Shown here one piece after another: positions 5,023 through 58,842 of a stretch of 64,000 nt of DNA. Source of the stretch: Octopus bimaculoides (lineage: Eukaryota); assembly GCF_001194135.2 (NCBI RefSeq), contig NC_069004.1:25137887-25201886 (forward strand). The letters are read 5' to 3'. Under the pieces are notes generated by a model. It worked only from the letters and a program-made list of their open reading frames with translations, ran no database searches and was not told the DNA's origin. Numbering within the stretch: position 1 is the first letter of the stretch; each line of letters opens with the position of its first letter. The position numbers and the translations under genes are program-made.

Positions 5023-5999
5023 NNNNNNNNNNNNNNNNNNNNNNNNNNNNNNNNNNNNNNNNNNNNNNNNNNNNNNNNNNNNNNNNNNNNNNNNNNNNNN
5101 NNNNNNNNNNNNNNNNNNNNNNNNNNNNNNNNNNNNNNNNNNNNNNNNNNNNNNNNNNNNNNNNNNNNNNNNNNNNNNNNNNNNNNNNNNNNNNNNNNNN
5201 NNNNNNNNNNNNNNNNNNNNNNNNNNNNNNNNNNNNNNNNNNNNNNNNNNNNNNNNNNNNNNNNNNNNNNNNNNNNNNNNNNNNNNNNNNNNNNNNNNNN
5301 NNNNNNNNNNNNNNNNNNNNNNNNNNNNNNNNNNNNNNNNNNNNNNNNNNNNNNNNNNNNNNNNNNNNNNNNNNNNNNNNNNNNNNNNNNNNNNNNNNNN
5401 NNNNNNNNNNNNNNNNNNNNNNNNNNNNNNNNNNNNNNNNNNNNNNNNNNNNNNNNNNNNNNNNNNNNNNNNNNNNNNNNNNNNNNNNNNNNNNNNNNNN
5501 NNNNNNNNNNNNNNNNNNNNNNNNNNNNNNNNNNNNNNNNNNNNNNNNNNNNNNNNNNNNNNNNNNNNNNNNNNNNNNNNNNNNNNNNNNNNNNNNNNNN
5601 NNNNNNNNNNNNNNNNNNNNNNNNNNNNNNNNNNNNNNNNNNNNNNNNNNNNNNNNNNNNNNNNNNNNNNNNNNNNNNNNNNNNNNNNNNNNNNNNNNNN
5701 NNNNNNNNNNNNNNNNNNNNNNNNNNNNNNNNNNNNNNNNNNNNNNNNNNNNNNNNNNNNNNNNNNNNNNNNNNNNNNNNNNNNNNNNNNNATATATGCA
5801 TACAACGGGCTTCTTTCAGTTTTCGCCTACCAGATAAACTCACAAGGCTTTGGTCGGCCCGAGGCTAAAGTAGAAGACACTTGCCCAAGACGCCACGCAG
5901 TGGGAGAGAATCCGGACTATGTGGTTGGGGAGAAAGCCTCTTACCACACAGCCAATCTTGCACCTATATATATATATTAAAAAAAAAATTATATGTTTC

Positions 6000-6247: not shown

Positions 6248-6400
6248 CGACGGGCTTCTTTCAGTTTCCGTCTACCAAATCCACTCACAATGCTTTGTTC
6301 GGCCCGAGGCTATAGTAGAAGACACTTACCCAAGGTGCCACGCAGTGTGACTGAACTAGGAACCATGTGGTTGGAAAGCAAGCTACTTACCACTCAGCCA
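6000..6400 (-). mobile_element. Composite SINE family B (tRNA/CORE-like head, microsatellite, conserved tail)
   Basis: Head ..agcttgctt(t/c)ccaaccacatggttc..gtggcaccttgggtaagtgtc, internal (TA)n(TG)n, tail gcggtgctccagcatggccgcagtcaaatga. Other copies at ~9030-9190, 9790-9995, 33815-34325, 44000-45370, 46355-46785, 58035-58140, 61170-61370 (+) and 5800-5965, 29370-29750, 32420-32600, 39185-39570, 47450-47850, 54285-54620 (-). Confidence 0.85.
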
Positions 6401-6631: not shown

Positions 6632-6690
6632 TATCCTTCTCACGTGATTTCGAACTCTGATAATAAGAGCTTAGTTCTCATCAGAGGTAC
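6632..6690 (-). ncRNA. Degenerate hammerhead ribozyme motif
   Basis: Minus strand: CTGATGA-GAACT...AGTTC-GAAA-TCACGTGA (palindromic helix III), but U16.1 appears replaced by G and helix I has only ~3 bp. Confidence 0.35.
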
Positions 6691-7885: not shown

Positions 7886-9297
7886 TGCTAGTAGGCCTTA
7901 AATTGACAGAACCTGAGGATCGTCACACAGATTGCCTTGTGGTTACTCGTCCCGGTACTCTGTGCTCTGAGTTCAAATACCACCCTAGTCTACTTTGTCT
8001 TTCAGTCTTTATGGATCGAAATCATCCTTTGCTTATTTCGATTCTTCTCTTTAGAACATTCTATGTAAGAGTAATATAATAGTCCGTATATAAAAGTCTG
8101 TACAGTTCATGCACATGGGCTATTATTGCACCTATATTGAAGTTAATAAGATTATGTCAGAGGTAACCTGTATAAAACAGTTGGACTGACCACGTACGAG
8201 GGACTTGGTGTCCCCTAGATGAAAGTAAGATCAGACTATGTAAGAGGCAAAGGGTATGTCATATATAAAAGTTAGTACAAAGTATGTAAGAAGGCAAAGG
8301 TAAAATGGTAACGACGTCCTTTGGTCATGAATGAGCATGAGACTGCATCTAGAGAGTTTCCGTCCGAGGCACAAGCGCGGGCAAGGTTGTTTGTGGAAGA
8401 CCAGCAGTTGCCCATGCAAACCAGTCACCCCTCTCCGCCGCATGGATGTTGTCCAGGAGAAAGATCGATATAGCTTGGCACCAGTGACGTCGCAACTCAT
8501 TTCTACAGCTGAGTAAACTGGAACAGCGTGAAATAAAGTGTCTTGCTCAAGAACACAGCACACATCCTAGTCCGGAAATCGAACTCACAATCTCATGATT
8601 GTAAGCCCGATGTTCAAACCATTGAGTCATGTGCCTTCACGAAAGCTAGGGTAGCCTCGGTAATATTCCAAATCTTACACGAATATGTTTGACACAAAAC
8701 ATTGGTGCCAAATCAGCAAAGTCTTAAAATCAAACATGCCATCTCATTTTTTCTTCTACGCATAATTGTGCCTCGCCTCCTACGAATAGATTGTTTCTCG
8801 ATCAGCTGACAGAGTAGCTGTCGTAACAAAAACTGTTGTGTATCAATGCATGGTACGAATTACTAAATATAAATAATGGTATATTTATGATATTTTATGT
8901 TACTTTAAAAGATGTTAGGGTAAGAAACATTTAAGGGGGATTCCAAAAATATGGACTTCTCAACGAAATAAGTAGTAAGTGAAGTATAGGAATTTCCATG
9001 GTAACAGTGGACTGGGAAGGACATAGATGTTAGGCATGACTGTGTGGTCAGAAGCTTGCTTCCAAACCACATGGTTCTGGGTTCAGTCCCCCTGGGAGGT
9101 ACCTTGAGCAAGTATCTTCCACTATAGCTTCAAGCCGATCAAAGCCTTGTCAGTGGATTTGGTAGACGGAAACTGAAATAAGTCCGTCGTATATATATAT
9201 ACGTATGTATGTATGTATGTATGTATGTATGTATGTATGTATGTATGTATGTATACGTATATATGTGTGTGCGTGTGTGTGTGTGTGTTTGTGTGTA

Positions 9298-9337
<40 letters not shown>

Positions 9338-9533
9338 TATATATATATACATATATAAACAATTTATCTTAAATCTCTGAGTGAGATATATACAGTAACA
9401 GTACCGAATAGTAATGTTTATATGCCATAAATGACGATATTATTGTTGTTTTAGCCCCAGTAAAACGTCTCTTCTAGCTGGAATATATAGCATTTGTGAG
9501 AGGAGAGAACTTTCGTCACTAGCTTGTGATTAT

Positions 9534-9579
9534 CTCACACTGAGGACGGGTAAGCACCCACAAACCTAAGGTCTGTGAG
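9534..9579 (+). ncRNA. Hammerhead ribozyme motif, G12 mutated (homolog of the 56-kb unit)
   Basis: CTCACA-CTGAGGA-C-GGGT aagc ACCC-A-cAAA-CCTAAG-GTC-TGTGAG; helix I 6 bp, helix II 4 bp, GUC site; GAAA reads CAAA. Confidence 0.6.
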
Positions 9580-10112
9580 TATCACGTGAGGCGAGAGATG
9601 GGAGAGATTACCTGCCTTGCAAATTGCTATACGACACAATGTGTGTGTCGATAGCCCGCTGGAAAAGATGTTTTCCAGGGGCTAAAACAACAGTAACATC
9701 GTCCTTTATAGGACTGCCACATTCTGTTGGCATATAAACATTGCTACATGTGTTTGTGTGTGTGTGTGCGTATGTATACATTTATATGTGCGTCTCTGTG
9801 TCTGTATTTCTCCGTCGCACCATCGCTGGAAAACAAATGTTGGTATGTTTACGTCCCTGTAATCTAGCGCTTCGTTTAAGAGATCGATAGATTAAGTAGC
9901 AGACTTACAAAGAATAAGTCCAGTGGTCGATTCTTTCGACTAAAAGGCAGTGCTCCAGTCTTGCCACAATCAAATGACTGAAACAAGTAAAAGACTAAAT
10001 GAATATATATATAAACAATAATATAACAACAAATGAATGAATGAGACCGCGATGTTATCTAAATAGAGGAATTTATAATATAATATGTGACAATTAGTCG
10101 GTTGCCATAAAA

Positions 10113-10177
10113 AAAAAAAAACTCAGAGTTTCAGATGTCGGGCCGGAAGTCTGCTCCGACATCTCTTCAGTTGTTTT
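10113..10177 (-). ncRNA. Type-I hammerhead ribozyme (left arm of inverted pair)
   Basis: Minus strand: AAAACAA-CTGAAGA-GATGTCGG...CCGACATC-T-GAAA-CTCTGAG-TT-TTTTTTT; perfect 8-bp helix II, helix III ACTC-T-GAGT, weak helix I. Confidence 0.65.
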
Positions 10178-10239
10178 AATAACTGACGAGATGCCGGAGC
10201 AGATTCTCGCCCCGACATCCGAAACTCTGAGTTTTATTA
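10177..10239 (+). ncRNA. Type-I hammerhead ribozyme (right arm of inverted pair)
   Basis: TAATAA-CTGACGA-GATGCCGG...CCGACATC-C-GAAA-CTCTGAG-TT-TTATTA; helix I 6 bp, helix II 7/8 bp, helix III ACTC-T-GAGT, GUU triplet ending at 10233. Confidence 0.75.
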
Positions 10240-10352
10240 TGGCAACCGTCATATTATATTATAGGTAAATTCCTATATATATATATATACAACTTTACGA
10301 TGAAAGTAAACAAACAAAGTTTGTTCTTTTCTAGAAGCGTCGAGATGTATTG

Positions 10353-10637
10353 TAAGATACAGAAATAAATTTATTTCTGAAACGCGTGATAATACTATAA
10401 ATAGCGTGATCAGGATAAACTGAAGCTAAATTTATAAGTTCTAAAATTGCAGAAGAATTCGTTGCTGGGCAGTTTAGTTTAATGGTAAAACACTTGACCC
10501 GTAATCACAGATATGTGAGTTCGAGTCTCATGATTGGCCAGTAGCGTATTTTTCTGCAATAAATGGATAATTTATCCTGATTACGTTATTTATAGCATTA
10601 TCACGCGTTTGAGAAATAAATTTATTTCTGTATCTTA
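10353..10637. repeat. 67-bp inverted repeats enclosing a tRNA-like sequence
   Basis: Arms 10353-10419 and 10571-10637 are nearly identical; the spacer holds a tRNA-like 10466-10540 with T-arm GTGAG-TTCGAGT-CTCAT. Confidence 0.7.
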
Positions 10638-28898: not shown

Positions 28899-30074
28899 TA
28901 GATAGATATACACATGCAACCCACACGCACACCCACACGCACACATTCATATATACATATGTATATGTTTCATTTTTTGTTACAATACTTTCGATTATAT
29001 GCTTACATGCTTACACTGAACTGTTGAAATCCACCAGGACATAGGTATATATTTTGGTTAGCACAATATGAATACATCGTCAACACTATATGATTTGGTA
29101 AAGGCGGAAAAAAATTTCCGTAAACCTTTCAGTTTCGAGATTAGACTGGAATGAAATCATCTCGAGAGAAGCTGTCAGCATATAAACAGACTTAGGTTTG
29201 TCACATACCTCCGATGTTTTATGGCGTTAATTCGGTAGTTTACGATGGCAAAATCCATCAAAATCTGCTGACCAGGAATGGTGTAGACATTTAGGCATAA
29301 TACTGGTATTGTAATTTCGTGTGTTGAAGCATATTCTGTTGTGTCTGGGGAGAGTGTTCATCGGTTATCTTTTATTTGTTTTAGTCATTAGACTGCGGCT
29401 ATGCTGGGTCACCGCCTTAAAGAATTTTAGTCGCACGATTAGAATCCCAGAACTTAATAGTTTTCCCTTTCAGGTATGGTACTTATTCTATCGGTCACTT
29501 TTGCCGAACAACTAATTTGCGGTGATGTAAACATACCAAGACCGGTTGTCAAACGGTGGTGGGGGACGAGCACATACACACACATATACGACAGGCTTCT
29601 TTCAGTTTCCGTCTACCAAATCCACTTAGAAGGTTTTGGTCAGCCCGCAGTTATAGTAGAAGACACTGGTGCAAGTTGCCACGTGATGGGATAGAACCTG
29701 GAACCATGTTGTTGGGAAGAAAACCTTTTATCACACAGCCGTGCCTGTGGCTATAAAGGAGAAGTGAATACCCATGTTCGAACAGGAGACCGTTCGATGT
29801 ATATATTTTTGAAAGTTTAGGATATATTCCATTGGTCTCTTTAGCTAAACTAGTAAATTAAAGGATCGTAAACCAACCAACACTAGTTGTCAAACGGTTT
29901 TAAAGAACAAACACAAATACAAACACAAAACCACACATATAGATATATATACATTTATACCTACATACGTACATAGACTTATAGACAGACACAGACGCAC
30001 ACACACACACAACTACACTTATATATGCATATACATACATATATGTGTGTGTGTGTATTATGTATGTATGTATG

Positions 30075-39174: not shown

Positions 39175-39575
39175 TATATTCTTTTATTCTTTTACTTGTT
39201 TGAGTAATTTGGCTGCGGCTATGCTGGAGCACTGCCTTTAGTTGAACAAATCGATCTCAGGACTTATTCTTTGTACGCCTAGTACTTATTATATCGGCCC
39301 CTATTGCGGAACCGCTAAGTTACAGGGACGTCAACACACCGATATCAGTTGTCAAGAGAAGGTGGAATGACAAACACAGACACACTAATATATACATATA
39401 TACATACATATATACGACGGGCTTCTTTCAGTTTCCGCCTACCAAGTTCACTCACAAGGGTTTGGTTGGGCCAAGTCTATAGTAGAAGGCACTTACGCAA
39501 GGTGCCACGCTATGAGATTCAACCCGGAACCATGTGGTTGGGAAACAAGTTCCTTACTACACAGCCACGCCTGCG

Positions 39576-39723: not shown

Positions 39724-41863
39724 CATACTAACAAATATGCGCTTACATACATGTCACTATATATATAATATTATATATACATATTTGTATACACACACAC
39801 GCACGTGTGTGTGTGTGTGTCTGTGTGTGTGTGTCTGTCTGTGTCACTAAGATAACATCTTAGTTATATATAAAAACACAGCAATCAATAGAAGAAACTA
39901 TCATCCTAGCATCCTATGGATCGATCGTGAAGTACTCACTTCCCGATGACCTCCTATGCAACCATGCTATTGATGGACCAGCATATTTTAGCAAAAATCT
40001 GAAACAGAAGTAATTTGAATAACAACAATAGAATTTGATATTAGCGACGCTGGCAGTATTAGTTCAAAACAGCATTTGGTAGAACTTATTTAACGTAAAT
40101 ATTCTGTAGAAAGTCACCCCACTGCGGTATTCGTCTTAAGAAAATATCTCTTATAAACGTATAGTGATGAAAAGCACATAAGTGTGTGATAAGCACACAG
40201 AAGGCGTACAGCGGCGGTGATAGAATTCTAAAATCGAAATTTCTGCATCTTTGCTCGTCATCAGTAGCACGTATCCACTAACAAGCGCATGTTTAAACGG
40301 AATTAGCTGCTATGGATATAGAAAAATAATGGTTGATATATCACTAGCGACACAAATAGCCGGAGAGCTGGGAAATCTTTCGCTATTAGAGACGAAAGCA
40401 ATGGTAGTTCAGAGCAGCAATCTGTAAATTGTACTTAACGTAGATATACTGTGAGAAAGCCACTTAACCGCTGTATTCGTCTTCAGAAAGTAACGCGCTA
40501 ACAGAAAAGGCGGCGTGCTGGCAGAAACGATAGCGCGCCGGGCGAAATGTTTAGCAGTATTTCGTCTGTCTTTATGTTCTGAGTTCAAATTCTGCCGAGG
40601 TGTACTTTGCCTTTCATCCTTTTGGGGTCGATAAATTAAGTACCAGTTACGCACTGGCGTCGATGTAATCGACTTAATCCCTTTGTGTGTCCTTGTTTGT
40701 CTCCTCTATGTTTAGCCCTTTGTGGGCAATAAACAAATAAGAAAGTATTGTGCATCGACTTATAGTGCTAAAAGGTACAAATGCTTTGTGGCTTTCTGCA
40801 GTACGTTACCGTATACAAAAGGCCATAATAAAATTGTCATGCTATGGTAAATTCCCAATATTATTGAAGTTGAGGCTAATATAAACGTAAAGTGTAGCCT
40901 CCCTTGCGCTTATAACTCTTAGGTCATATCTTGAGCGTTATACATTTGCTACTGAAGAGTAGGAAATAGCTGCGAAATATTTAATGAGCAAAGGAGATAA
41001 TGAGGATTTAAAATCCCAAGATGCAACGGTCAATGGCGTTTATGTCACTTTTCTGCGAAAGGCGCTATATGTCTTATCAGAAGCTGCCATCTCATATTAA
41101 TTTTAAATTTTGATGCAAGGACAGCAGTTTTGGGGTAAAGGGGTTTGTCGATATCGAACCCAATACTCCCGAAAGGATGAAAGGCCAAGCCAACCTCGGC
41201 GGAATTTGAACTCAGAACGCATAGACGGATAAACTGCTGCTAAGCTCACCGACTTGTACTGCCTCACATTCCAACATGCCATTATTATTAATACAATATA
41301 CAATAAGGCAGCAAACTGACAGAATCGTTATCGCGCTGGACGAAATGCTTAGCAGTATTTCGCCCGTCGCTACGTTCTGAGTTCAAATTCCGCCGAGATC
41401 GACTTTGCCTTTCATCCTTTCGGGGTCGATAAATTAAGTACCAGTTGCGTACTGGGTAGATGTAATCAACTAGCCTCTCCCCCCAAAATTTCGGGCCTTG
41501 TGTTTAGAGTAGAAAGGATTAGTAATAATACAATATACAATAAGGCGGCGAACAAGCAGAATCGTTAGCACGCCGGATGAAATACTTAACTCTATTTCGT
41601 CCGTCTCCATGTTCTGAGTACAAATTCCGCTGAGGTCGACTTTGCTTTTTACCCCTTCGGGGTCGATAAAGTAAGGACCAGTGAGACACTGGGGTAGATG
41701 TAATCGAGTAATCCCTTCCTCTAAAATTTCATGTCTCGTGCCTTTATTACAAAGGTTTATTACAATATACAATAGAAGCTATATGAACTTTTACTGTGAC
41801 ATAAATACAAACAATAGCTCTGTCATTGAATATATACACACCAATAGAACGAATATTATTGAG

Positions 41864-45162: not shown

Positions 45163-46529
45163 TGTGTGTGTGTGTCTGTCTGTGTTTGTATTAATCCCGC
45201 CCACTGGTGTTGGTTTATGTACGTCCCTGTAACTTAGCGTTTGTGCAAAAGAGACCGATAGAAAAAGTTCAAGACAAACTAGTAAGTACTGGAGTCAATT
45301 TGTTCGACCAAATACTTCGAGGTGTTGCCCCAGCATGGCCGCAGTCAAATGACTGAAACAAGTAAAATGTAAAAGACAAGGTAGTGAAGTGGCTGAGTTG
45401 TGAGGGAGTTCGATAGATGCCCTCGCAATATTTGTCCCGACACTTTGTTTATGCTCGGAATTCAAATCTCGCCGAGATCAACTTTAAATTTTCTCCTTTC
45501 GGGATTCCAAAAATTGTGCCAATCTGTTGTAGTGGCAAACTGTTGTAGTGGTAGAGCTGTTAGAGTGATGGACGAGATGCTTTGCAGTATGTGTTCCAAT
45601 TCTTTGCGCTCAGAAACCCTGCCAGCAAGTGATTTGTGTATCTAATTCACAGAATTAATAATAAAATGAGCCGGTTGTTTTTTTTATTGTTAAACGGCAG
45701 TATGAACTGATTGTTTGTTCAAAGTTCTAGAAAGCAATGATCTTAACTGTCATTAAAATAGATGGAGGTTATCCGTTTCACTGTTTTATAATCTCGCCTC
45801 TCATTTGCATTACATATAGCACTATTTCTGTATATCACACTATACTGTAACGTTCAATTTGTCCGTTTGATGATAGATAATAAGAAACGTTGTAGTCTTA
45901 TGAATAGTCTGTCTACTTTAAAATTTTTGATAGGAGATTTATATCGACTATCATATTAGGAAGTAATTAACATGCTTGAATTTTAAGCTAATACGTATTG
46001 TTGCATTTTAGCTCTTACAACTAATTTGGCTCTTGCAGAACTCTTAATTCTATATTTCTTTTATATAACAGCCACTCTATGTGAATAGAATCAAATTGGT
46101 TGACGATATTGCATTAAGCCGCAACACACTGATGATATAGATATTATCTGTTTCGAGAATACGTAACGAACCAATTGTTGAGATAATGAGGTGCTCTTAG
46201 CTCTAGCTTCTAGTTTCTTAATTGCTTCAGAACACTCAGCTGCATAAAAAAAAAATATGAAGAAAAAGACACTACAGAGAACGTTGATATTATTTAAGTT
46301 CCTGACAAGAATGCTTCGTTTCCAACAAAATATTTTATCTATTTTGGTGACTGTGTATTAAGAAGCTTGCTTCCCAACAACCTGGTTCTAGATTCAGTCC
46401 CCCTGCGTGTCACCATGGGGTAGTGTATTCTACTATAGGCTCGGGCCGATCAAAGAATTGTGAGTGGATTTGGTAGACGGAAACTGAGAGAAGCCCGTCC
46501 TATATATGCATATATATGTGTATGTGCGG

Positions 46530-50786: not shown

Positions 50787-51508
50787 TTAATATCAAAAGG
50801 GTAAAATTAATTAATTAAATTAATTAATCAATCAATTAATTAATGATTTTACCAAGTAGATCGGCACGTTAAAATAACCTTTATAGGTAAATTTATACAA
50901 ATATTCTATAATTATAAACATAATTATAATTAGGGAGCAGCTAATTGCTTCACCATATATTTGTATAATTTTACCTACAAAGGTTATTTTAACGCACCGA
51001 TTTACTTGGTAAAATTATTAATTAATTGATTGATTAATTAATTAATTTAATTAATTAATTTTACCCTTTTATTATTAATTTAAAATTATAATTTACTCCC
51101 TAATCGAATACTGCAGTTTTCTGCGGCACTGCACGTAATATGCACGTGGGTACAGGGGAAAAATATGTATTCACATTGGGCTGTGTAAATTTTGGAAGTG
51201 TTGGTTGGATACCTGTTGTACGTTGTCACTCGATCGTGTGCGTATTTAAACCCTAACACTTTCAAATTTTATAATGGAAATGCTACACTGATGACGGGAA
51301 GTAAGTAAATTAAATATTTTAATCTCGAAACGCGTCTGTGGCTAATCGAAGTCGTGTTGATTCATTATTTTTGTCTTTGCCTACATAAAAAAGGGCGTTA
51401 CTGTCTGGGAGATTCTTACGGTAGTAGAAAAGGAAACTCCTATTTCTAAATTCGGTTTGTGGTGAAGCAATTAGCTGACCCCTAATTATAATTATGTTTA
51501 TATAATAC

Positions 51509-53564: not shown

Positions 53565-55404
53565 TACATATACATATATATATATATATATATNNNNNNN
53601 NNNNNNNNNNNNNNNNNNNNNNNNNNNNNNNNNNNNNNNNNNNNNNNNNNNNNNNNNNNNNNNNNNNNNNNNNNNNNNNNNNNNNNNNNNNNNNNNNNNN
53701 NNNNNNNNNNNNNNNNNNNNNNNNNNNNNNNNNNNNNNNNNNNNNNNNNNNNNNNNNNNNNNNNNNNNNNNNNNNNNNNNNNNNNNNNNNNNNNNNNNNN
53801 NNNNNNNNNNNNNNNNNNNNNNNNNNNNNNNNNNNNNNNNNNNNNNNNNNNNNNNNNNNNNNNNNNNNNNNNNNNNNNNNNNNNNNNNNNNNNNNNNNNN
53901 NNNNNNNNNNNNNNNNNNNNNNNNNNNNNNNNNNNNNNNNNNNNNNNNNNNNNNNNNNNNNNNNNNNNNNNNNNNNNNNNNNNNNNNNNNNNNNNNNNNN
54001 NNNNNNNNNNNNNNNNNNNNNNNNNNNNNNNNNNNNNNNNNNNNNNNNNNNNNNNNNNNNNNNNNNNNNNNNNNNNNNNNNNNNNNNNNNNNNNNNNNNN
54101 NNNNNNNNNNNNNNNNNNNNNNNNNNNNNNNNNNNNNNNNNNNNNNNNNNNNNNNNNNNNNNNNNNNNNNNNNNNNNNNNNNNNNNNNNNNNNNNNNNNN
54201 NNNNNNNNNNNNNNNNNNNNNNNNNNNNNNNNNNNNNNNNNNNNNNNNNNNNNNNNNNNNNNNNNNNNNNNNNNNNNNNNNNNNAATCGACCCCAGGACT
54301 TATTCTTTAGAAGCCTAGTACTTATTCTATCGGTCTCTTTTGCCGAACCGCAAAGTTACGGGGACATAAACACACCAGCATCGGTTGTCAAGCGATGTTG
54401 GGGGGACAAACACAGACACACAAACACATACATACATACATATATATATATACATATACACGACGGGCTTCTCTCAGTTTCCGTCTACCAAATCCACTCA
54501 CAAGGCTTTGGTCGGCCCGAGGCTATAGTAGAAGACACTTGCCCAAGATGCCACGCAGTGGGACTGAACCCGGGACCATGTGGTTGGTAAGCAAGCTACT
54601 TACCACACAGCCACTCCTACGCTATATATTTATATATTTATTCTAAATAGTTTAGAATTAAGAACAAAATTAGGAGCCATAAGAATGTTATGAAAATAAT
54701 ATTTTCACTCTTTTATCGTTTCTATTTCGCACTCACATCCTACTCCTGTATCTCTCTCTCTCCCCCCTCTCTCTCTCTCTTTCTCCCCTCTGTCTCTTCC
54801 TCTTCCCATCTCTCTCCCGTATTTTCTTTCACTTATTTATATGTTATGTCGGTTAACGTGAGCCTGTCTACTAGTGTTCGGTGCAAATCAATCATTACAG
54901 TCAGATATTCTCCATTGAACGATTCGGCTGGTAGAAAAATCTGCTAGTCTTAATGGTGCTCTTCCTGTTCGTCTATTGGGTAATTCTGATGTCAGTGACG
55001 CGAAAAATTCAATATCAGAGCGAAATTGGTGCGGTTTATAAATGAATATACATTCGTACTTGCATATTTAAACACACACATATACACACACATACACAAA
55101 CAAACAAATAGACGTAAGACATATATGCGCACAAATTGATATATCTAGATGCGTATACATACACGTATATGTATGTGTACCTATAGGGCGTATGGTGATT
55201 TTACACTGGTATGAATAGCAAATAATCGAAGAACCGAAACGCTTAATAATGTTAGGTGGAGAGGAATAGCGTTATTTAATGAAATCCAACTCTCTGCTAC
55301 TTGCGATTCCGAGTTTTCCGATGCCTATTATAAGTTGCCTATAGATTTGGAACGTAAACCAAATATAAAACCGAGGGAGATACCGAGACAGACAAGTAGA
55401 TAGA

Positions 55405-55485
<81 letters not shown>

Positions 55486-56276
55486 NNNNNNNNNNNNNNN
55501 NNNNNNNNNNNNNNNNNNNNNNNNNNNNNNNNNNNNNNNNNNNNNNNNNNNNNNNNNNNNNNNNNNNNNNNNNNNNNNNNNNNNNNNNNNNNNNNNNNNN
55601 NNNNNNNNNNNNNNNNNNNNNNNNNNNNNNNNNNNNNNNNNNNNNNNNNNNNNNNNNNNNNNNNNNNNNNNNNNNNNNNNNNNNNNNNNNNNNNNNNNNN
55701 NNNNNNNNNNNNNNNNNNNNNNNNNNNNNNNNNNNNNNNNNNNNNNNNNNNNNNNNNNNNNNNNNNNNNNNNNNNNNNNNNNNNNNNNNNNNNNNNNNNN
55801 NNNNNNNNNNNNNNNNNNNNNNNNNNNNNNNNNNNNNNNNNNNNNNNNNNNNNNNNNNNNNNNNNNNNNNNNNNNNNNNNNNNNNNNNNNNNNNNNNNNN
55901 NNNNNNNNNNNNNNNNNNNNNNNNNNNNNNNNNNNNNNNNNNNNNNNNNNNNNNNNNNNNNNNNNNNNNNNNNNNNNNNNNNNNNNNNNNNNNNNNNNNN
56001 NNNNNTATATACTTTTTCTAGTGACGAAAAGTCAGTGATCTTGAAAAGGTGGAAACAAGCAATAATAAATCTCCGAGCGAGATATAAACAATAGCCACAC
56101 GACATCGTGAAGTATATTTGCCACCTAAGTGTGGCTAACCCCTAAGGGTCGATGCTACTGTAGCTTGTAGCCCCAGGAAGACATCTCCTCCAGCTGGGTA
56201 TTGACACACTATCTGTGCCCTATCAATAATATTTGCAAAGGGAAATCATCGTTCCCATCTCCAGCCTGACGTGATA

Positions 56277-56321
56277 CACACGGACCCGAGTTTCTGGGTA
56301 TTGACCCGTCATCAGCGTGTG
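56277..56321 (-). ncRNA. Type-I hammerhead ribozyme, tandem unit 1
   Basis: Minus strand: CACACG-CTGATGA-C-GGGT caat ACCC-A-GAAA-CTCGG-GTC-CGTGTG; helix I 6 bp, helix II 4 bp, near-palindromic helix III ACTCGGGT, GUC site. Confidence 0.8.
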
Positions 56322-56650
56322 ACAACCAGCAGTTGACGATGGGAAATAATTCTCAATGCAAATGTATATATATATATATATATATATACTTTTTCTAGTG
56401 ACGAAAACTCAGTGATCTTGAAAAGGTGGAAACAAGCGATAATAAATCTCTGAGCGAGATATAAACAGTAACGGCACGACATCGTGAAGTATATTTGCCA
56501 CCTAAATGTGGCTAACCCTTAAGGGTCGATGCTATTGTAGCTTGTAACCCCAGGAAGACATCTCCTTCAGCTGCCTATTGACACACTATCTGTGCTCTAC
56601 CAGTATTTGCAAAGGGAAGTCATTCTTCCCATCTCCAACCTGACGTGATA

Positions 56651-56695
56651 CACACGGACCCGAGTTTCTGGGTATTGACCCGTCATCAGCGTGTG
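56651..56695 (-). ncRNA. Type-I hammerhead ribozyme, tandem unit 2
   Basis: Identical 45-nt motif 374 bp from the unit 1 copy. Confidence 0.8.
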
Positions 56696-56735
56696 ACAAT
56701 CACCGGTTGGCTATGGGAAATGGTTCTCAATGCAA

Positions 56736-56768
<33 letters not shown>

Positions 56769-56769
56769 G

Positions 56770-58032
56770 ATATATACATACGTCAGATGTAAAATAATAT
56801 GGTAAAAAGAAATGAAATGAGTATTAATTGTTTATTGTTATTGAACAAATGAAACATTAAATGTCCATTCTTATTGAACTAGTATACTTTCTTGCATTTA
56901 TGCAATCTTCAGGTTCATCTGGTGGTGGTGATAGTTGTGTTCATTGGCTTCAACTAGGGCTGACTCGTTAAATTTTGTCCTTTATATACATTCCTGTAGT
57001 TAGAAGTAGTAGTTCCTTGGCTATTTTTAGAAATGATGCCATACCATTTTTCAGTGTTTATTTTTAGAAATGATGACAGCAGATATTAATAAATTATTTA
57101 ATATTAGAAGAATTTGGTTAACAATATTCAACAATTAGACACCAGTAAATGTAAATAGAATACAGATCATACGAAAATCTTCTTGCATGACAGGTAAATC
57201 CAAATATAATTTGGCAGAATTTCGAGAAATTCAGAGTATTTGACAATACCCGTCACTACTTATAGTAAATTGTGTTCAGCGGGCTATGAAAATACCCACA
57301 CAACAACCGAAGACAATACAAAGAAGAGAAAAACAAGAACAAATCATACCATTTATAGTGACGCACAATTCATGCCACCATATCATTTTCAAAATCGCTA
57401 AAGCAAACCTACCATTCATTGCTCAAAGTAAGGAATTATGAGACATCATTACAGACCAAACAATTACTCTCAGTAAAAGGCAGCCTAAAAGCATGAAAAA
57501 GTTATTATCAAAGGCAAGGTTTGACCTTAGCAACAAAGACCAACAATTCACTGTGTCTAAATGCAATGATAGCCAATGCGGTACATGCCAATTAATTCAT
57601 ACCGGCCCATATATGAACACAAAAAACGGGGAAAATATTCACAAACGCAAATATGAACTGCAAAAGCAGAAATTTAATCTACTGCATCAAATGCCCGAAT
57701 TGTGAAGAACTGTATGCTGGCCAGACAGGCAATGCACTATCAGAACGCTCACATGTGCACCAACAGCAAATTAAAAATCCAGAAGTACACCAAATACCGC
57801 TGAGTAAAATGTGGCCGGAAAATATTTATAATATTTCCATTTCATAAACTATACAATCCGAATGTAATCAAGAGAAAACTGAGAGAAAAGGACTTTATTA
57901 ATAAAATCAAAGCCAAGCTTAATAAACAATGATAAAAACTAATCTTATTTAAGGTTTAAAAGTCTTATCCCCATATCTAAAAATAAAAATCTCTAAAAAG
58001 TACTGTTGTTATCATTTCTAAAAATAAACACT
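56770..58032 (+). mobile_element. Penelope-like element remnant (RT C-terminus and GIY-YIG) with inverted 5' pLTR
   Basis: IPFIVTHN, KCNDSQCGTCQLI and NCKSRNLIYCIKCPNCEELYAGQTG (57350-57800). 57053-57081 is the reverse complement of the 3' tail at ~58003-58032, and the inverted segment continues into an HHR. Confidence 0.85.
56875..56917 (-). ncRNA. Type-I hammerhead ribozyme in the inverted pLTR of a Penelope-like element
   Basis: Minus strand: TGAAC-CTGAAGA-TTGCA taaa TGCAA-GAAA-GTATAC-TA-GTTCA; perfect palindromic helix III AGTATACT, CUA site, helix I 5 bp. Confidence 0.75.
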
Positions 58033-58842
58033 TTCGGGTTCAGTCCCAATGACAGGTACCTTGGCAAAGTGTCTTCTGCTGTAGTTTCGGCCCGACCAAA
58101 GCCTTGTGAGTGGACGAGGTAGACGGAAACTGAAAGAAGCNNNNNNNNNNNNNNNNNNNNNNNNNNNNNNNNNNNNNNNNNNNNNNNNNNNNNNNNNNNN
58201 NNNNNNNNNNNNNNNNNNNNNNNNNNNNNNNNNNNNNNNNNNNNNNNNNNNNNNNNNNNNNNNNNNNNNNNNNNNNNNNNNNNNNNNNNNNNNNNNNNNN
58301 NNNNNNNNNNNNNNNNNNNNNNNNNNNNNNNNNNNNNNNNNNNNNNNNNNNNNNNNNNNNNNNNNNNNNNNNNNNNNNNNNNNNNNNNNNNNNNNNNNNN
58401 NNNNNNNNNNNNNNNNNNNNNNNNNNNNNNNNNNNNNNNNNNNNNNNNNNNNNNNNNNNNNNNNNNNNNNNNNNNNNNNNNNNNNNNNNNNNNNNNNNNN
58501 NNNNNNNNNNNNNNNNNNNNNNNNNNNNNNNNNNNNNNNNNNNNNNTATATGCAGTAATGATGCGATAAAGTAGTTGTATGCTGTCAACTTAATGTGACA
58601 GTCCCATGAAGGGAATAATGCTACTGCTATCTAGCCCTGAGAAGCAGCACCGCTAAACCTGTATCCAGAGACTAGTTTCTGAGTCATTCCTCGGCACACA
58701 CACACGCACACACTCGCGCAGACAAACAGACAGCCAGAGATAGAGGGAGAGAAGGAAAGAGAGAGAGGAGGAAAGATACATACATACATACATACATACA
58801 TACATACATACATACATACATACATACATACGCGCATACAGA

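What the first reader, a model, noticed from the sequence alone, without database searches (positions are those of the whole stretch)
56011..56737. Retrozyme-like tandem array: ~374-bp period, one intact hammerhead per unit
Seen: two highly similar non-coding units separated by (TA)n. The 45-nt HHR is identical in both while the flanks differ at many positions, and a ~520-N gap bounded by TA repeats on the left could hide more units. Both HHRs have an unusual C/A opposition at 10.1/11.1. Known: metazoan non-LTR retrozymes are tandem repeats of a few hundred bp whose transcripts self-cleave to monomers and circularise, and near-palindromic helix III supports dimeric cleavage. Inferred: a minus-strand transcript would release a ~374-nt monomer or circRNA. 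A Penelope remnant, a plausible source of RT in trans, sits directly adjacent. I know of no description of this family but cannot search.
Basis: partly seen in the sequence, partly recalled or inferred. Interest (0 to 1): 0.88.

Follow-up and report, generated by a model that had tools for sequence, protein, structure and literature searches.

The report
Octopus hammerhead-ribozyme repeat (retrozyme-like dimer)
Two copies of a ~350-bp non-coding repeat in an octopus-like genome each carry a complete self-cleaving hammerhead ribozyme motif, which fits the already known animal "retrozyme" class of small mobile elements that ride on Penelope-like retrotransposons; it is a new example of that class, not a new kind of thing.

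Summary
Two non-coding units (56012-56364 and 56389-56738, 91% identical) lie head to tail inside a (TA)n microsatellite. Each carries a 45-nt type I hammerhead on the minus strand. The predicted cuts after C56657 and C56283 would give a 374-nt monomer.

The motif is not chance: about 0.003 such motifs are expected per window. Helix I shows three compensatory pair changes across relatives. The C10.1/A11.1 opposition is kept in a 73%-identical third copy at 9357-9739 and in an unrelated eukaryote-like metagenome contig. Helix III is unstable as a hairpin but forms an 8-bp duplex between two copies, which points to dimeric cleavage.

No Rfam hammerhead model detects the motif. Cleavage, RNA and circles are untested.

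The adjacent Penelope-like remnant is real but broken, and it carries its own, different hammerhead on the same strand (56875-56917). The unit shows no homology to that element's untranslated region.

Best reading: a (TA)n-targeted, Penelope-dependent non-autonomous hammerhead element of the metazoan non-LTR retrozyme type, seen here as a dimer. It may be a true tandem or two stacked insertions. It is a new member of a known kind, and I found no paper describing it in cephalopods.

The parts
55407..55485 (.). (GT)21(TA)19 microsatellite bounding the left side of the assembly gap
55486..56005 (.). 520-N assembly gap. It is flanked by TA repeats on both sides and could hide further units.
56012..56364 (-). 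Unit 1 of the non-coding repeat (353 nt, 45% GC)
   Evidence: No ORF is longer than 56 aa. The six-frame translation has no relative among 5.8 billion proteins.
56277..56321 (-). Hammerhead 1 (type I). The predicted cut is 3' of C17 at 56283.
56365..56388 (.). (TA)n spacer between the two units
56389..56738 (-). Unit 2 of the repeat (350 nt, 45% GC), 90.9% identical to unit 1
56651..56695 (-). Hammerhead 2, identical to hammerhead 1. The predicted cut is 3' of C17 at 56657, so the monomer 56656->56283 is 374 nt.
56739..56780 (.). TA-rich microsatellite between unit 2 and the Penelope-like 3' fragment
56787..57082 (-). Inverted 3'-UTR fragment of a Penelope-like element. It matches the sequence downstream of the same element in O. 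sinensis locus L001 (79%). Its inner end (57053-57082) is a 30-nt inverted repeat of 58003-58032.
56875..56917 (-). The Penelope-like element's own hammerhead (UGAAC CUGAAGA UUGCAUAAAUGCAA GAAA GUAUACUA GUUCA; C17 at 56880). It is on the same strand as the array but belongs to a different hammerhead family.
   Evidence: The same motif is at L001 10612-10654. Analogous motifs lie about 130-270 nt after the ORF2 stop in the full-length relatives L004, L005 and L006. It scores only 11 bits with model R1.
57193..57929 (+). 5'-truncated, degenerate Penelope-like ORF2 remnant. It corresponds to residues ~463-696 of 698 of relative P0005: the region after the RT, a CX4CXXC linker and the GIY-YIG endonuclease. 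It contains stops and a frameshift.
57930..58032 (+). 3'-UTR stub of the plus-strand Penelope-like copy. It ends where a SINE-like repeat begins.
9483..9739 (+). Third, older family copy in direct orientation, 73% identical. It starts after TATATA with the same 5' end (CATTTG...). Its hammerhead at 9534-9579 keeps C10.1/A11.1 and helix I through compensatory changes, but has G12->C, so the core is dead.
9357..9480 (-). Inverted, 5'-truncated partial copy of the same family, abutting the direct copy head to head. This layout is typical of Penelope-like insertions.
   Evidence: layout described in PMC8557442

Best explanation
The two units are copies of a ~350-bp non-coding, non-autonomous retroelement of an octopus-like genome. 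They sit head to tail in a (TA)n microsatellite, and each carries a canonical-architecture type I hammerhead. This corresponds to the metazoan non-LTR retrozyme class.

**Proposed mechanism** (shown = read from the sequence; inferred = from what is known of the family):
1. A minus-strand transcript that runs through both units contains two hammerheads (shown).
2. Helix III is too weak as a hairpin but is self-complementary. The two ribozymes, or two transcripts, would therefore pair through an 8-bp helix III into the double-hammerhead form (pairing shown in silico; its use is inferred).
3. Cleavage 3' of C56657 and C56283 would release a 374-nt RNA with 5'-OH and 2',3'-cyclic phosphate ends (inferred).
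4. A host RtcB-type tRNA ligase could circularise this RNA (inferred from PMC7229834).
5. The RNA would be copied and integrated in trans by an intact Penelope-like RT/GIY-YIG enzyme whose endonuclease prefers (TA)n (inferred).

The basis for step 5 is the flanks of all copies, the head-to-head inverted truncated copy at 9.4-9.7 kb, and the CX4CXXC linker of the neighbouring remnant.

The C10.1/A11.1 opposition is an inherited feature of this hammerhead lineage, and probably lowers monomeric activity. This locus is probably old and may no longer be active.
For: **The hammerhead is real.**
- The catalytic core is complete, with helix I 6 bp, helix II 4 bp and helix III 2 bp.
- Chance expectation is 0.003 per window.
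- Across three distinct relatives, 100% of pair cells are paired, and three helix I pairs change on both sides; 6 of 500 shuffles reach this.
- The motif is identical in units that are otherwise 9% diverged (P = 0.01).

**The C/A opposition is inherited.** The C/A opposition and the helix II sequence are kept in the 73%-identical copy at 9534-9579. They are also kept in metagenome contig L002, which shares nothing else with the window.

**Dimeric cleavage is plausible.** The helix III duplex energies are -10.3, -12.7 and -9.6 kcal/mol in the three variants, against 0 for the hairpin.

**The units look like retrozyme units.**
- They are non-coding and 41-45% GC.
- The monomer folds better than shuffles (z = -2.9).
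- The hammerhead sits at the tip of a long imperfect hairpin in all three copies.

**Link to Penelope-like elements.**
- All copies abut TA/TG microsatellites.
- (TA)n is the reported preferred target of Penelope-like elements that carry a CX2-5CxxC linker (PMC8557442).
- The neighbouring remnant has CX4CXXC plus GIY-YIG.
- The 9.4-9.7 kb locus has an inverted 5'-truncated copy next to a direct copy.
- A family fragment lies next to the same Penelope family and (TA)n in O. sinensis.

**Fit to published descriptions.** The architecture matches that of canonical metazoan type I hammerheads and retrozymes (PMC4209133; PMC7229834). Those descriptions include an axolotl ribozyme with a mismatch at the base of helix II that cleaves better as a dimer.
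Against: - No Rfam hammerhead model reports the motif, even at E <= 10 on 75 nt.
- G10.1-C11.1 is replaced by C/A, which may cripple catalysis.
- Only two units are visible. They are separated by (TA)n and 9% diverged, so they may be two independent insertions.
- Tandem Repeats Finder did not call an array.
- There is no evidence of transcription, cleavage or circles.
- The third copy has a dead core (G12C).
- Penelope-like expansions in octopus are reported as old, about 56 My (PMC13282606).
- No genome-wide census was possible, so linkage of the unit to some other coding Penelope family is not excluded.
Confidence: 0.65

Rival explanations
1. The units are two independent, same-orientation insertions of a dispersed SINE-like hammerhead element into a (TA)n hot spot. 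That hot spot also received the Penelope fragments. On this reading the locus is not a tandem array generated from a multimeric or circular RNA, and the 374-nt spacing is incidental.
For: - The units are 9% diverged and each is bounded by TA tracts.
- The same microsatellite holds a Penelope 3' fragment in the same orientation and another in the opposite orientation.
- The 9.5-kb copy shows the same defined 5' end directly after TATATA.
- Penelope-like endonucleases are reported to prefer (TA)n.
Against: - Penelope-type integration itself typically yields partial tandems.
- Published retrozymes range from dimers upward and also occur as monomers.
- The gap may hide more units.
- Even if this reading is true, a read-through transcript would still carry two hammerheads. 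This is therefore a difference of origin, not of kind.
Confidence: 0.25
2. The units are solo or tandem pseudo-LTRs of an autonomous Penelope-like family. They are terminal repeats left after loss of the ORF, not a separate non-autonomous element.
For: - Hammerheads of Penelope-like elements lie in their terminal repeats (PMC4209133).
- Xenopus retrozymes are close relatives of such repeats (2026 preprint).
- A Penelope remnant is adjacent.
Against: - The unit has no detectable similarity to the adjacent element's 3' UTR, in the window or in L001.
- That element carries its own, different hammerhead.
- No RT/EN coding sequence lies on the unit's strand, and none lies elsewhere in the window.
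- The full-length relatives L004-L007 lack the unit and its hammerhead type.
Confidence: 0.1
3. This is a decayed relic with a hammerhead-shaped but catalytically dead motif. The C/A opposition at the base of helix II and the minimal helix III prevent cleavage, and the locus has no RNA-level activity.
For: - There is no Rfam match.
- The minimum-free-energy fold of the isolated 47-mer is not the hammerhead fold: -13.3 against -8.3 kcal/mol.
- The third copy has G12C.
- Octopus Penelope activity is reported as old.
Against: - The C/A opposition is conserved in three separate lineages, with helix I maintained by compensatory changes.
- The motif is identical between units that are 9% diverged (P = 0.01).
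- An axolotl retrozyme hammerhead with a mismatch at the same position cleaves, and does so better as a dimer.
Confidence: 0.3

Closest known systems
Metazoan non-LTR retrozymes (Cervera & de la Pena 2020, PMC7229834), including the mussel families
   Same: - One type I hammerhead per 170-400-nt non-coding unit.
- Head-to-tail units, from dimers upward.
- GC below 50%, and no LTR, PBS or PPT.
- Co-occurrence with Penelope-like elements.
- Predicted monomer of a few hundred nt.
   Different: - Only two units are seen.
- The units are separated by a (TA)n tract.
- C/A replaces G-C at 10.1/11.1.
- There are no expression or cleavage data.
- No retrozyme has been reported from a cephalopod in the papers I could search.
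Axolotl HHR_Amex2 / Rtz_353 retrozyme (PMC7229834)
   Same: - Helix III is 2 bp capped by a tetraloop.
- There is a mismatch at the base of helix II (U.U there, C/A here).
- The unit is ~350 nt.
- Cleavage is more efficient as a dimer.
   Different: It comes from a different phylum and a different sequence family, has tens of thousands of copies in long arrays, and its activity has been shown experimentally.
Hammerheads in the terminal repeats of Penelope-like elements (Cervera & de la Pena 2014, PMC4209133)
   Same: Type I topology, a link to Penelope-like elements, and a proposed dimeric mode through a palindromic helix III.
   Different: - The minimal Penelope motifs have helix II of 7-8 bp, helix I of 4-5 bp and little or no helix III; the array motif has the canonical 6/4/2 layout.
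- The Penelope element next to the array carries its own, distinct hammerhead (56875-56917).
- The unit flanks no ORF.
Schistosoma Sm-alpha SINE-like elements and newt satellite 2 (cited in PMC4209133; otherwise from my own knowledge)
   Same: Dispersed or tandem repeats of ~330 bp, each with a type I hammerhead. The newt ribozyme works as a dimer because of its weak helix III.
   Different: There is no sequence relationship. I did not test for Pol III promoter boxes or for the high copy number reported for those elements.

Membership tests
Hammerhead ribozyme, type I | Conserved core: C3 U4 G5 A6 N7 G8 A9, G12 A13 A14, A15.1-U16.1, H17 | tested here: met
   All core positions are present in both units. 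The 9.5-kb copy has G12C.
Hammerhead ribozyme, type I | Three helices around the core, with helix I open, supported by covariation | tested here: met
   Helix I is 6 bp, helix II 4 bp and helix III 2 bp. All 35 pair cells are paired, and three helix I pairs change on both sides across three distinct sequences. Helices II and III do not vary, so they are uninformative.
Hammerhead ribozyme, type I | G10.1-C11.1 (or another Watson-Crick pair) closing helix II against the core | tested here: not met
   There is a C/A opposition in both units, in the 9.5-kb copy and in L002.
Hammerhead ribozyme, type I | Match to the curated Rfam hammerhead covariance models | tested here: not met
   There is no hammerhead hit at the gathering score or at E <= 10, whether on the whole window, 811 nt or 75 nt. 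L002 gives the same result.
Hammerhead ribozyme, type I | Loop 1 / loop 2 tertiary contacts and actual self-cleavage | not testable with these tools
   An internal loop follows the 6-bp helix I inside a long hairpin in all three copies. Whether contacts form, and whether the RNA cleaves, needs experiment.
Metazoan non-LTR retrozyme | Hammerhead-bearing units of ~150-450 bp in head-to-tail repeats (dimer or more) | tested here: met
   Two units with a 374-377-bp period. This is the minimum number, a (TA)n spacer lies between them, and a gap may hide more.
Metazoan non-LTR retrozyme | Non-coding, low GC (<50%), no LTR/PBS/PPT | tested here: met
   No ORF exceeds 56 aa, and no protein relative was found. 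GC is 41-45%. I saw no terminal repeats other than the units themselves, but I ran no specific PBS/PPT search.
Metazoan non-LTR retrozyme | Expressed as linear and circular monomer RNAs | not testable with these tools
   No transcriptome could be searched by nucleotide sequence.
Metazoan non-LTR retrozyme | Mobility: dispersed copies, co-occurrence with Penelope-like elements | tested here: met
   There is a third copy at 9357-9739 and a fragment in O. sinensis locus L001. Penelope remnants are adjacent in both loci.
Pseudo-LTR of a Penelope-like element | Direct repeats flanking an RT-EN ORF, homologous to that element's untranslated regions | tested here: not met
   No ORF lies between or beside the units on their strand. 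There is no similarity to the neighbouring element's UTR. Other Penelope families of the genome could not be examined.

The most novel reading that the evidence does not exclude
The C10.1/A11.1 hammerhead is a conserved functional subclass, not a defect. It is shared by this octopus family and by at least one unrelated eukaryote (contig L002). On this reading it defines a (TA)n-targeted retrozyme lineage that is still transcribed in cephalopods and processed into ~374-nt circular RNAs. Cleavage would depend on dimerisation, and possibly on a protonated A+.C wobble.
Probability: 0.15. Interest if true: 0.55.

Novelty: new member of a known kind. Interest (0 to 1): 0.35.

Why it matters
If active, this would extend ribozyme-made circular RNAs and Penelope-dependent retrozymes to cephalopods, whose genomes are rich in SINE and Penelope-like repeats. 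It would also add a natural hammerhead variant that tolerates a C/A opposition where G-C is the rule, which bears on how strict that core-adjacent pair really is.

It also shows a practical blind spot. Curated Rfam models miss this motif entirely, so standard annotation of such genomes will not report these elements. Beyond that, it is an expected kind of element in a mollusc genome.

Tried and rejected
1. **Rfam.** Scans at the gathering score and at E <= 10 found no hammerhead family.
2. **Tandem Repeats Finder.** It found only microsatellites and no 374-bp array.
3. **Six-frame translation of both units against 5.8 billion proteins.** I ran this to pull in other copies or transcripts. No hit was found.
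4. **Exact-pattern scans for the helix II/core signature.**
   - The viral and prokaryotic genome collections gave nothing.
   - The metagenome collection gave one real relative (L002) and one GC-rich chance match inside bacterial sequence (L003).
5. **An RT fragment beside the L002 hammerhead.** I suspected one, but BLASTP against P0005 and a Pfam scan do not support it, so I dropped it.
6. **Circular permutation in the 9.5-kb copy.** I first read it as joining the unit's 3' end directly to the hammerhead, which would be evidence of circular permutation. A proper local alignment shows it simply starts at the normal 5' end after TATATA, so I rejected that idea.
7. **Other CUGAUGA...GAAA matches.**
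   - 6557 (+): I read no helix II or helix I in it.
   - 6640-6684 (-) and 40228-40267 (-): they fail the helix or position 16.1 requirements.
   - 51283-51341 (+): it passed only the relaxed descriptor, with a poor helix II.
   - 15686-15749 (-): a relaxed-descriptor hit in an A-rich stretch, which I took for chance and did not examine further.
8. **Covariance model R1.** Built from the four hammerheads, it found no further family members in the window or in the fetched loci.
9. **The unit as the neighbouring Penelope element's untranslated region.** I rejected this because there is no similarity and that element has a different hammerhead.

Full report
**What is in the sequence.** The region reads as follows on the plus strand:
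- a (GT)21(TA)19 microsatellite (55407-55485);
- a 520-N gap (55486-56005);
- TATATA, then unit 1 (56012-56364);
- a 24-nt (TA)n tract (56365-56388);
- unit 2 (56389-56738);
- a TA-rich tract (56739-56780).

The units differ at 32 of 353 aligned columns, which is 90.9% identity. They are non-coding. The longest ORF is 56 aa and runs through the TA tract. A six-frame translation of both units found no relative among 5.8 billion predicted proteins. GC is 45% for the units and 41% for the cleavage-to-cleavage monomer.

The window is a draft animal genome full of microsatellites and gaps. The one named protein relative is from Octopus sinensis, at 84% identity, so the source is an octopus or a close relative.

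**The hammerhead.** On the minus strand each unit reads 5'-CACACG CUGAUGA C GGGU CAAU ACCC A GAAA CUCGGGU C / CGUGUG.
- All core positions are present.
- Helix I is 6 bp and helix II is 4 bp, plus the C/A opposition at 10.1/11.1.
- Helix III is A-U and C-G, capped by UCGG.

This 6/4/2 layout with a small palindromic loop 3 is what Cervera and de la Pena describe as the canonical metazoan type I hammerhead (PMC4209133).

**Is it more than chance?** I wrote a descriptor scan: CUGANGA, a helix II hairpin, GAAA, a helix III hairpin closed by A15.1-U16.1, H17, then helix I. In 300 first-order Markov simulations of the window it found 0.037 relaxed motifs per window, and 0.003 motifs of this quality.

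The 45-nt motif is identical in the two units and lies inside the longest identical run, 61 nt. With the 32 differences placed at random, the motif escapes them with P = 0.010, and a run of at least 61 nt occurs with P = 0.056. This is moderate evidence of constraint, or of recent homogenisation.

**Relatives and covariation.** A blastn of the unit against the window found a third, older copy at 9357-9739, 73% identical. Its hammerhead (9534-9579, plus strand):
- keeps helix II and the C/A opposition exactly;
- keeps helix I through C-G->U-A and U-A->A-U double changes;
- has a 3-bp helix III;
- has G12->C, so it is catalytically dead.

An exact-pattern scan of public metagenome contigs found one further relative, L002. 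It is a 3.6-kb, 36% GC, eukaryote-like contig with a LINE-type tail. Its motif is ACUCU CUGAUGA C GGGU GAAA ACCC A GAAA CUCGAGU A / AGAGU. It shares nothing else with the window.

On the alignment of these sequences, every pair cell forms a standard pair, and three helix I pairs change on both sides. Only 6 of 500 shuffles reach that, and slid registers collapse to 8-57% paired. The fold has therefore been maintained, and the C/A opposition is an inherited trait of this hammerhead lineage, not a local lesion.

A covariance model built from the four sequences found no further members in the window or in the fetched loci.

**Dimeric mode.** Helix III alone has no stable hairpin (0 kcal/mol). ACUCGGGU pairs with itself over 8 bp at -10.3 kcal/mol. 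The L002 version, ACUCGAGU, is a perfect palindrome (-12.7), and the 9.5-kb version gives -9.6.

The minimum-free-energy fold of the isolated 47-mer is not the hammerhead fold (-13.3 against -8.3 kcal/mol). This is expected for ribozymes that need a partner. In all three copies the motif sits at the tip of a long imperfect hairpin that extends helix I beyond an internal loop. The 374-nt monomer folds better than shuffles (z = -2.9).

**What curated models say.** No Rfam hammerhead family reports the motif at the gathering score or at E <= 10, even on a 75-nt stretch, and the same holds for L002. I treat this as a failed membership feature. It is most likely caused by the C/A opposition and the minimal helix III, and it is a warning that activity is unproven.

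There is a precedent. The axolotl HHR_Amex2 has a U.U mismatch at the base of helix II and a 2-bp helix III. It cleaves 22% in one hour as a monomer and much better as a dimer (PMC7229834).

**The neighbourhood.** tblastn with full-length relatives shows a single Penelope-like coding remnant at 57193-57929 on the plus strand. It corresponds to residues ~463-696 of 698 of P0005. It covers the region after the RT, a CX4CXXC linker and the GIY-YIG endonuclease, and it contains stops and a frameshift. This copy cannot supply enzyme.

Its 3' UTR stops at 58032, where a SINE-like repeat begins.

Between this remnant and the array lies an inverted fragment of the same element's 3' end (57082->56787, minus strand). 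Two observations identify it:
- a 30-nt inverted repeat with 58003-58032;
- a 79% match to the sequence downstream of the same element in O. sinensis locus L001.

My scan found that this fragment carries its own hammerhead at 56875-56917, with C17 at 56880, on the same strand as the array. The same motif is at L001 10612-10654. Analogous ones, with U.U at 10.1/11.1, lie about 130-270 nt after the ORF2 stop in the full-length relatives L004, L005 and L006. L007 gave no motif in that scan.

These are a different hammerhead family, scoring 11-12 bits with my model against 72 for the array. The unit has no detectable similarity to this element's untranslated region. The array is therefore not that element's terminal repeat.

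**Signs of mobility by Penelope-type machinery.**
- Every copy abuts a TA or TG microsatellite.
- (TA)n is reported as the preferred target of Penelope-like elements with a CX2-5CxxC linker before the endonuclease (PMC8557442).
- Both the array units and the 9.5-kb copy begin with the same 5' end (CATTTG...) directly after a TA tract.
- The 9.5-kb locus consists of an inverted 5'-truncated partial copy abutting a direct copy. This is the layout described for Penelope-like insertions.
- In O. sinensis, a fragment of the family lies beside the same Penelope family and a (TA)n tract.

These points are consistent with trans-mobilisation, but they do not prove it.

**Interpretation.** The best reading (0.65) is a non-autonomous, Penelope-dependent hammerhead element of the metazoan non-LTR retrozyme type, present here as a dimer.

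Its origin is open. It may be a tandem formed in one integration or from a multimeric RNA, or it may be two same-orientation insertions into a targeted microsatellite. The 9% divergence and the TA spacer favour neither decisively. Under either origin, a read-through minus-strand transcript would carry two ribozymes, or three if it starts in the Penelope fragment, which would add a 223-nt piece.

Remaining possibilities:
- The unit may be the terminal repeat of some other Penelope family. This could not be excluded without the whole genome.
- The motif may be catalytically dead.
- The family may be extinct. Octopus Penelope expansions are dated to about 56 My (PMC13282606).

**Novelty.** Retrozymes with type I hammerheads are established in cnidarians, mussels, insects and many vertebrates, and a 2026 preprint argues that they derive from Penelope terminal repeats.

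Full-text searches for hammerhead or retrozyme together with octopus or cephalopod returned no description of such an element. A detailed 2026 repeat annotation of O. vulgaris mentions neither ribozymes nor retrozymes.

This is therefore a new member of a known kind. The conserved C/A at 10.1/11.1 and the blindness of Rfam to it are the only mildly unusual points.

Noticed in passing
window 56875-56917 (-); L001 10612-10654 (+); L004 3310-3354; L005 3295-3339; L006 3638-3684: The Penelope-like element next to the array, and its full-length relatives from metagenome assemblies, carry their own type I hammerhead after ORF2.
   Followed up: partly
window 58032-58140, 54467-54572, 6254-6356, 9079-9182, 2862-2961, 39421-39529, 5809-5889, 46393-46494, 29595-29667: A SINE-like repeat of about 105 bp, 77-84% identical between copies, occurs at least ten times in the window. 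Copies often run into TA/TG/TATG microsatellites and assembly gaps.
   Followed up: no
window 6640-6684 (-): A hammerhead-like core sits next to a (TA)n tract: CUGAUGA, a helix II of GAACU/AGUUC, GAAA, then the perfect 8-nt palindrome UCACGUGA. Position 16.1 is G, so it fails the canonical rule. It may be a decayed minimal hammerhead.
   Followed up: partly
window 50910-51505: An element bounded by ~45-nt terminal inverted repeats (50910-50960 and 51461-51505), resembling a MITE. It holds a weak hammerhead-like motif at 51283-51341 (+) that begins CUGAUGACGGG but has a poor helix II.
   Followed up: no
window 10468-10539 (+): Rfam calls a tRNA here (37.2 bits, above the gathering score), but ARAGORN finds none. 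It is probably a tRNA-derived repeat or a pseudogene. An inverted repeat lies just upstream (10100-10260).
   Followed up: partly
window 56194-56205 versus 56294-56305 (unit 1): The 12-nt string GTCAATACCCAG (loop 2 plus the 3' strand of helix II) recurs about 100 nt downstream in the same unit, preceded by GUGUGU. It is partly kept in the 9.5-kb copy. It could form an alternative pairing with the 5' half of the ribozyme.
   Followed up: no
L002 578-620 (+) (contig from ENA assembly ERZ1740055): A single, non-tandem hammerhead with the same C/A opposition and helix II, and a perfectly palindromic helix III (CUCGAG). It sits in an unidentified AT-rich eukaryote-like contig that also holds a LINE-type tail.
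   Followed up: partly
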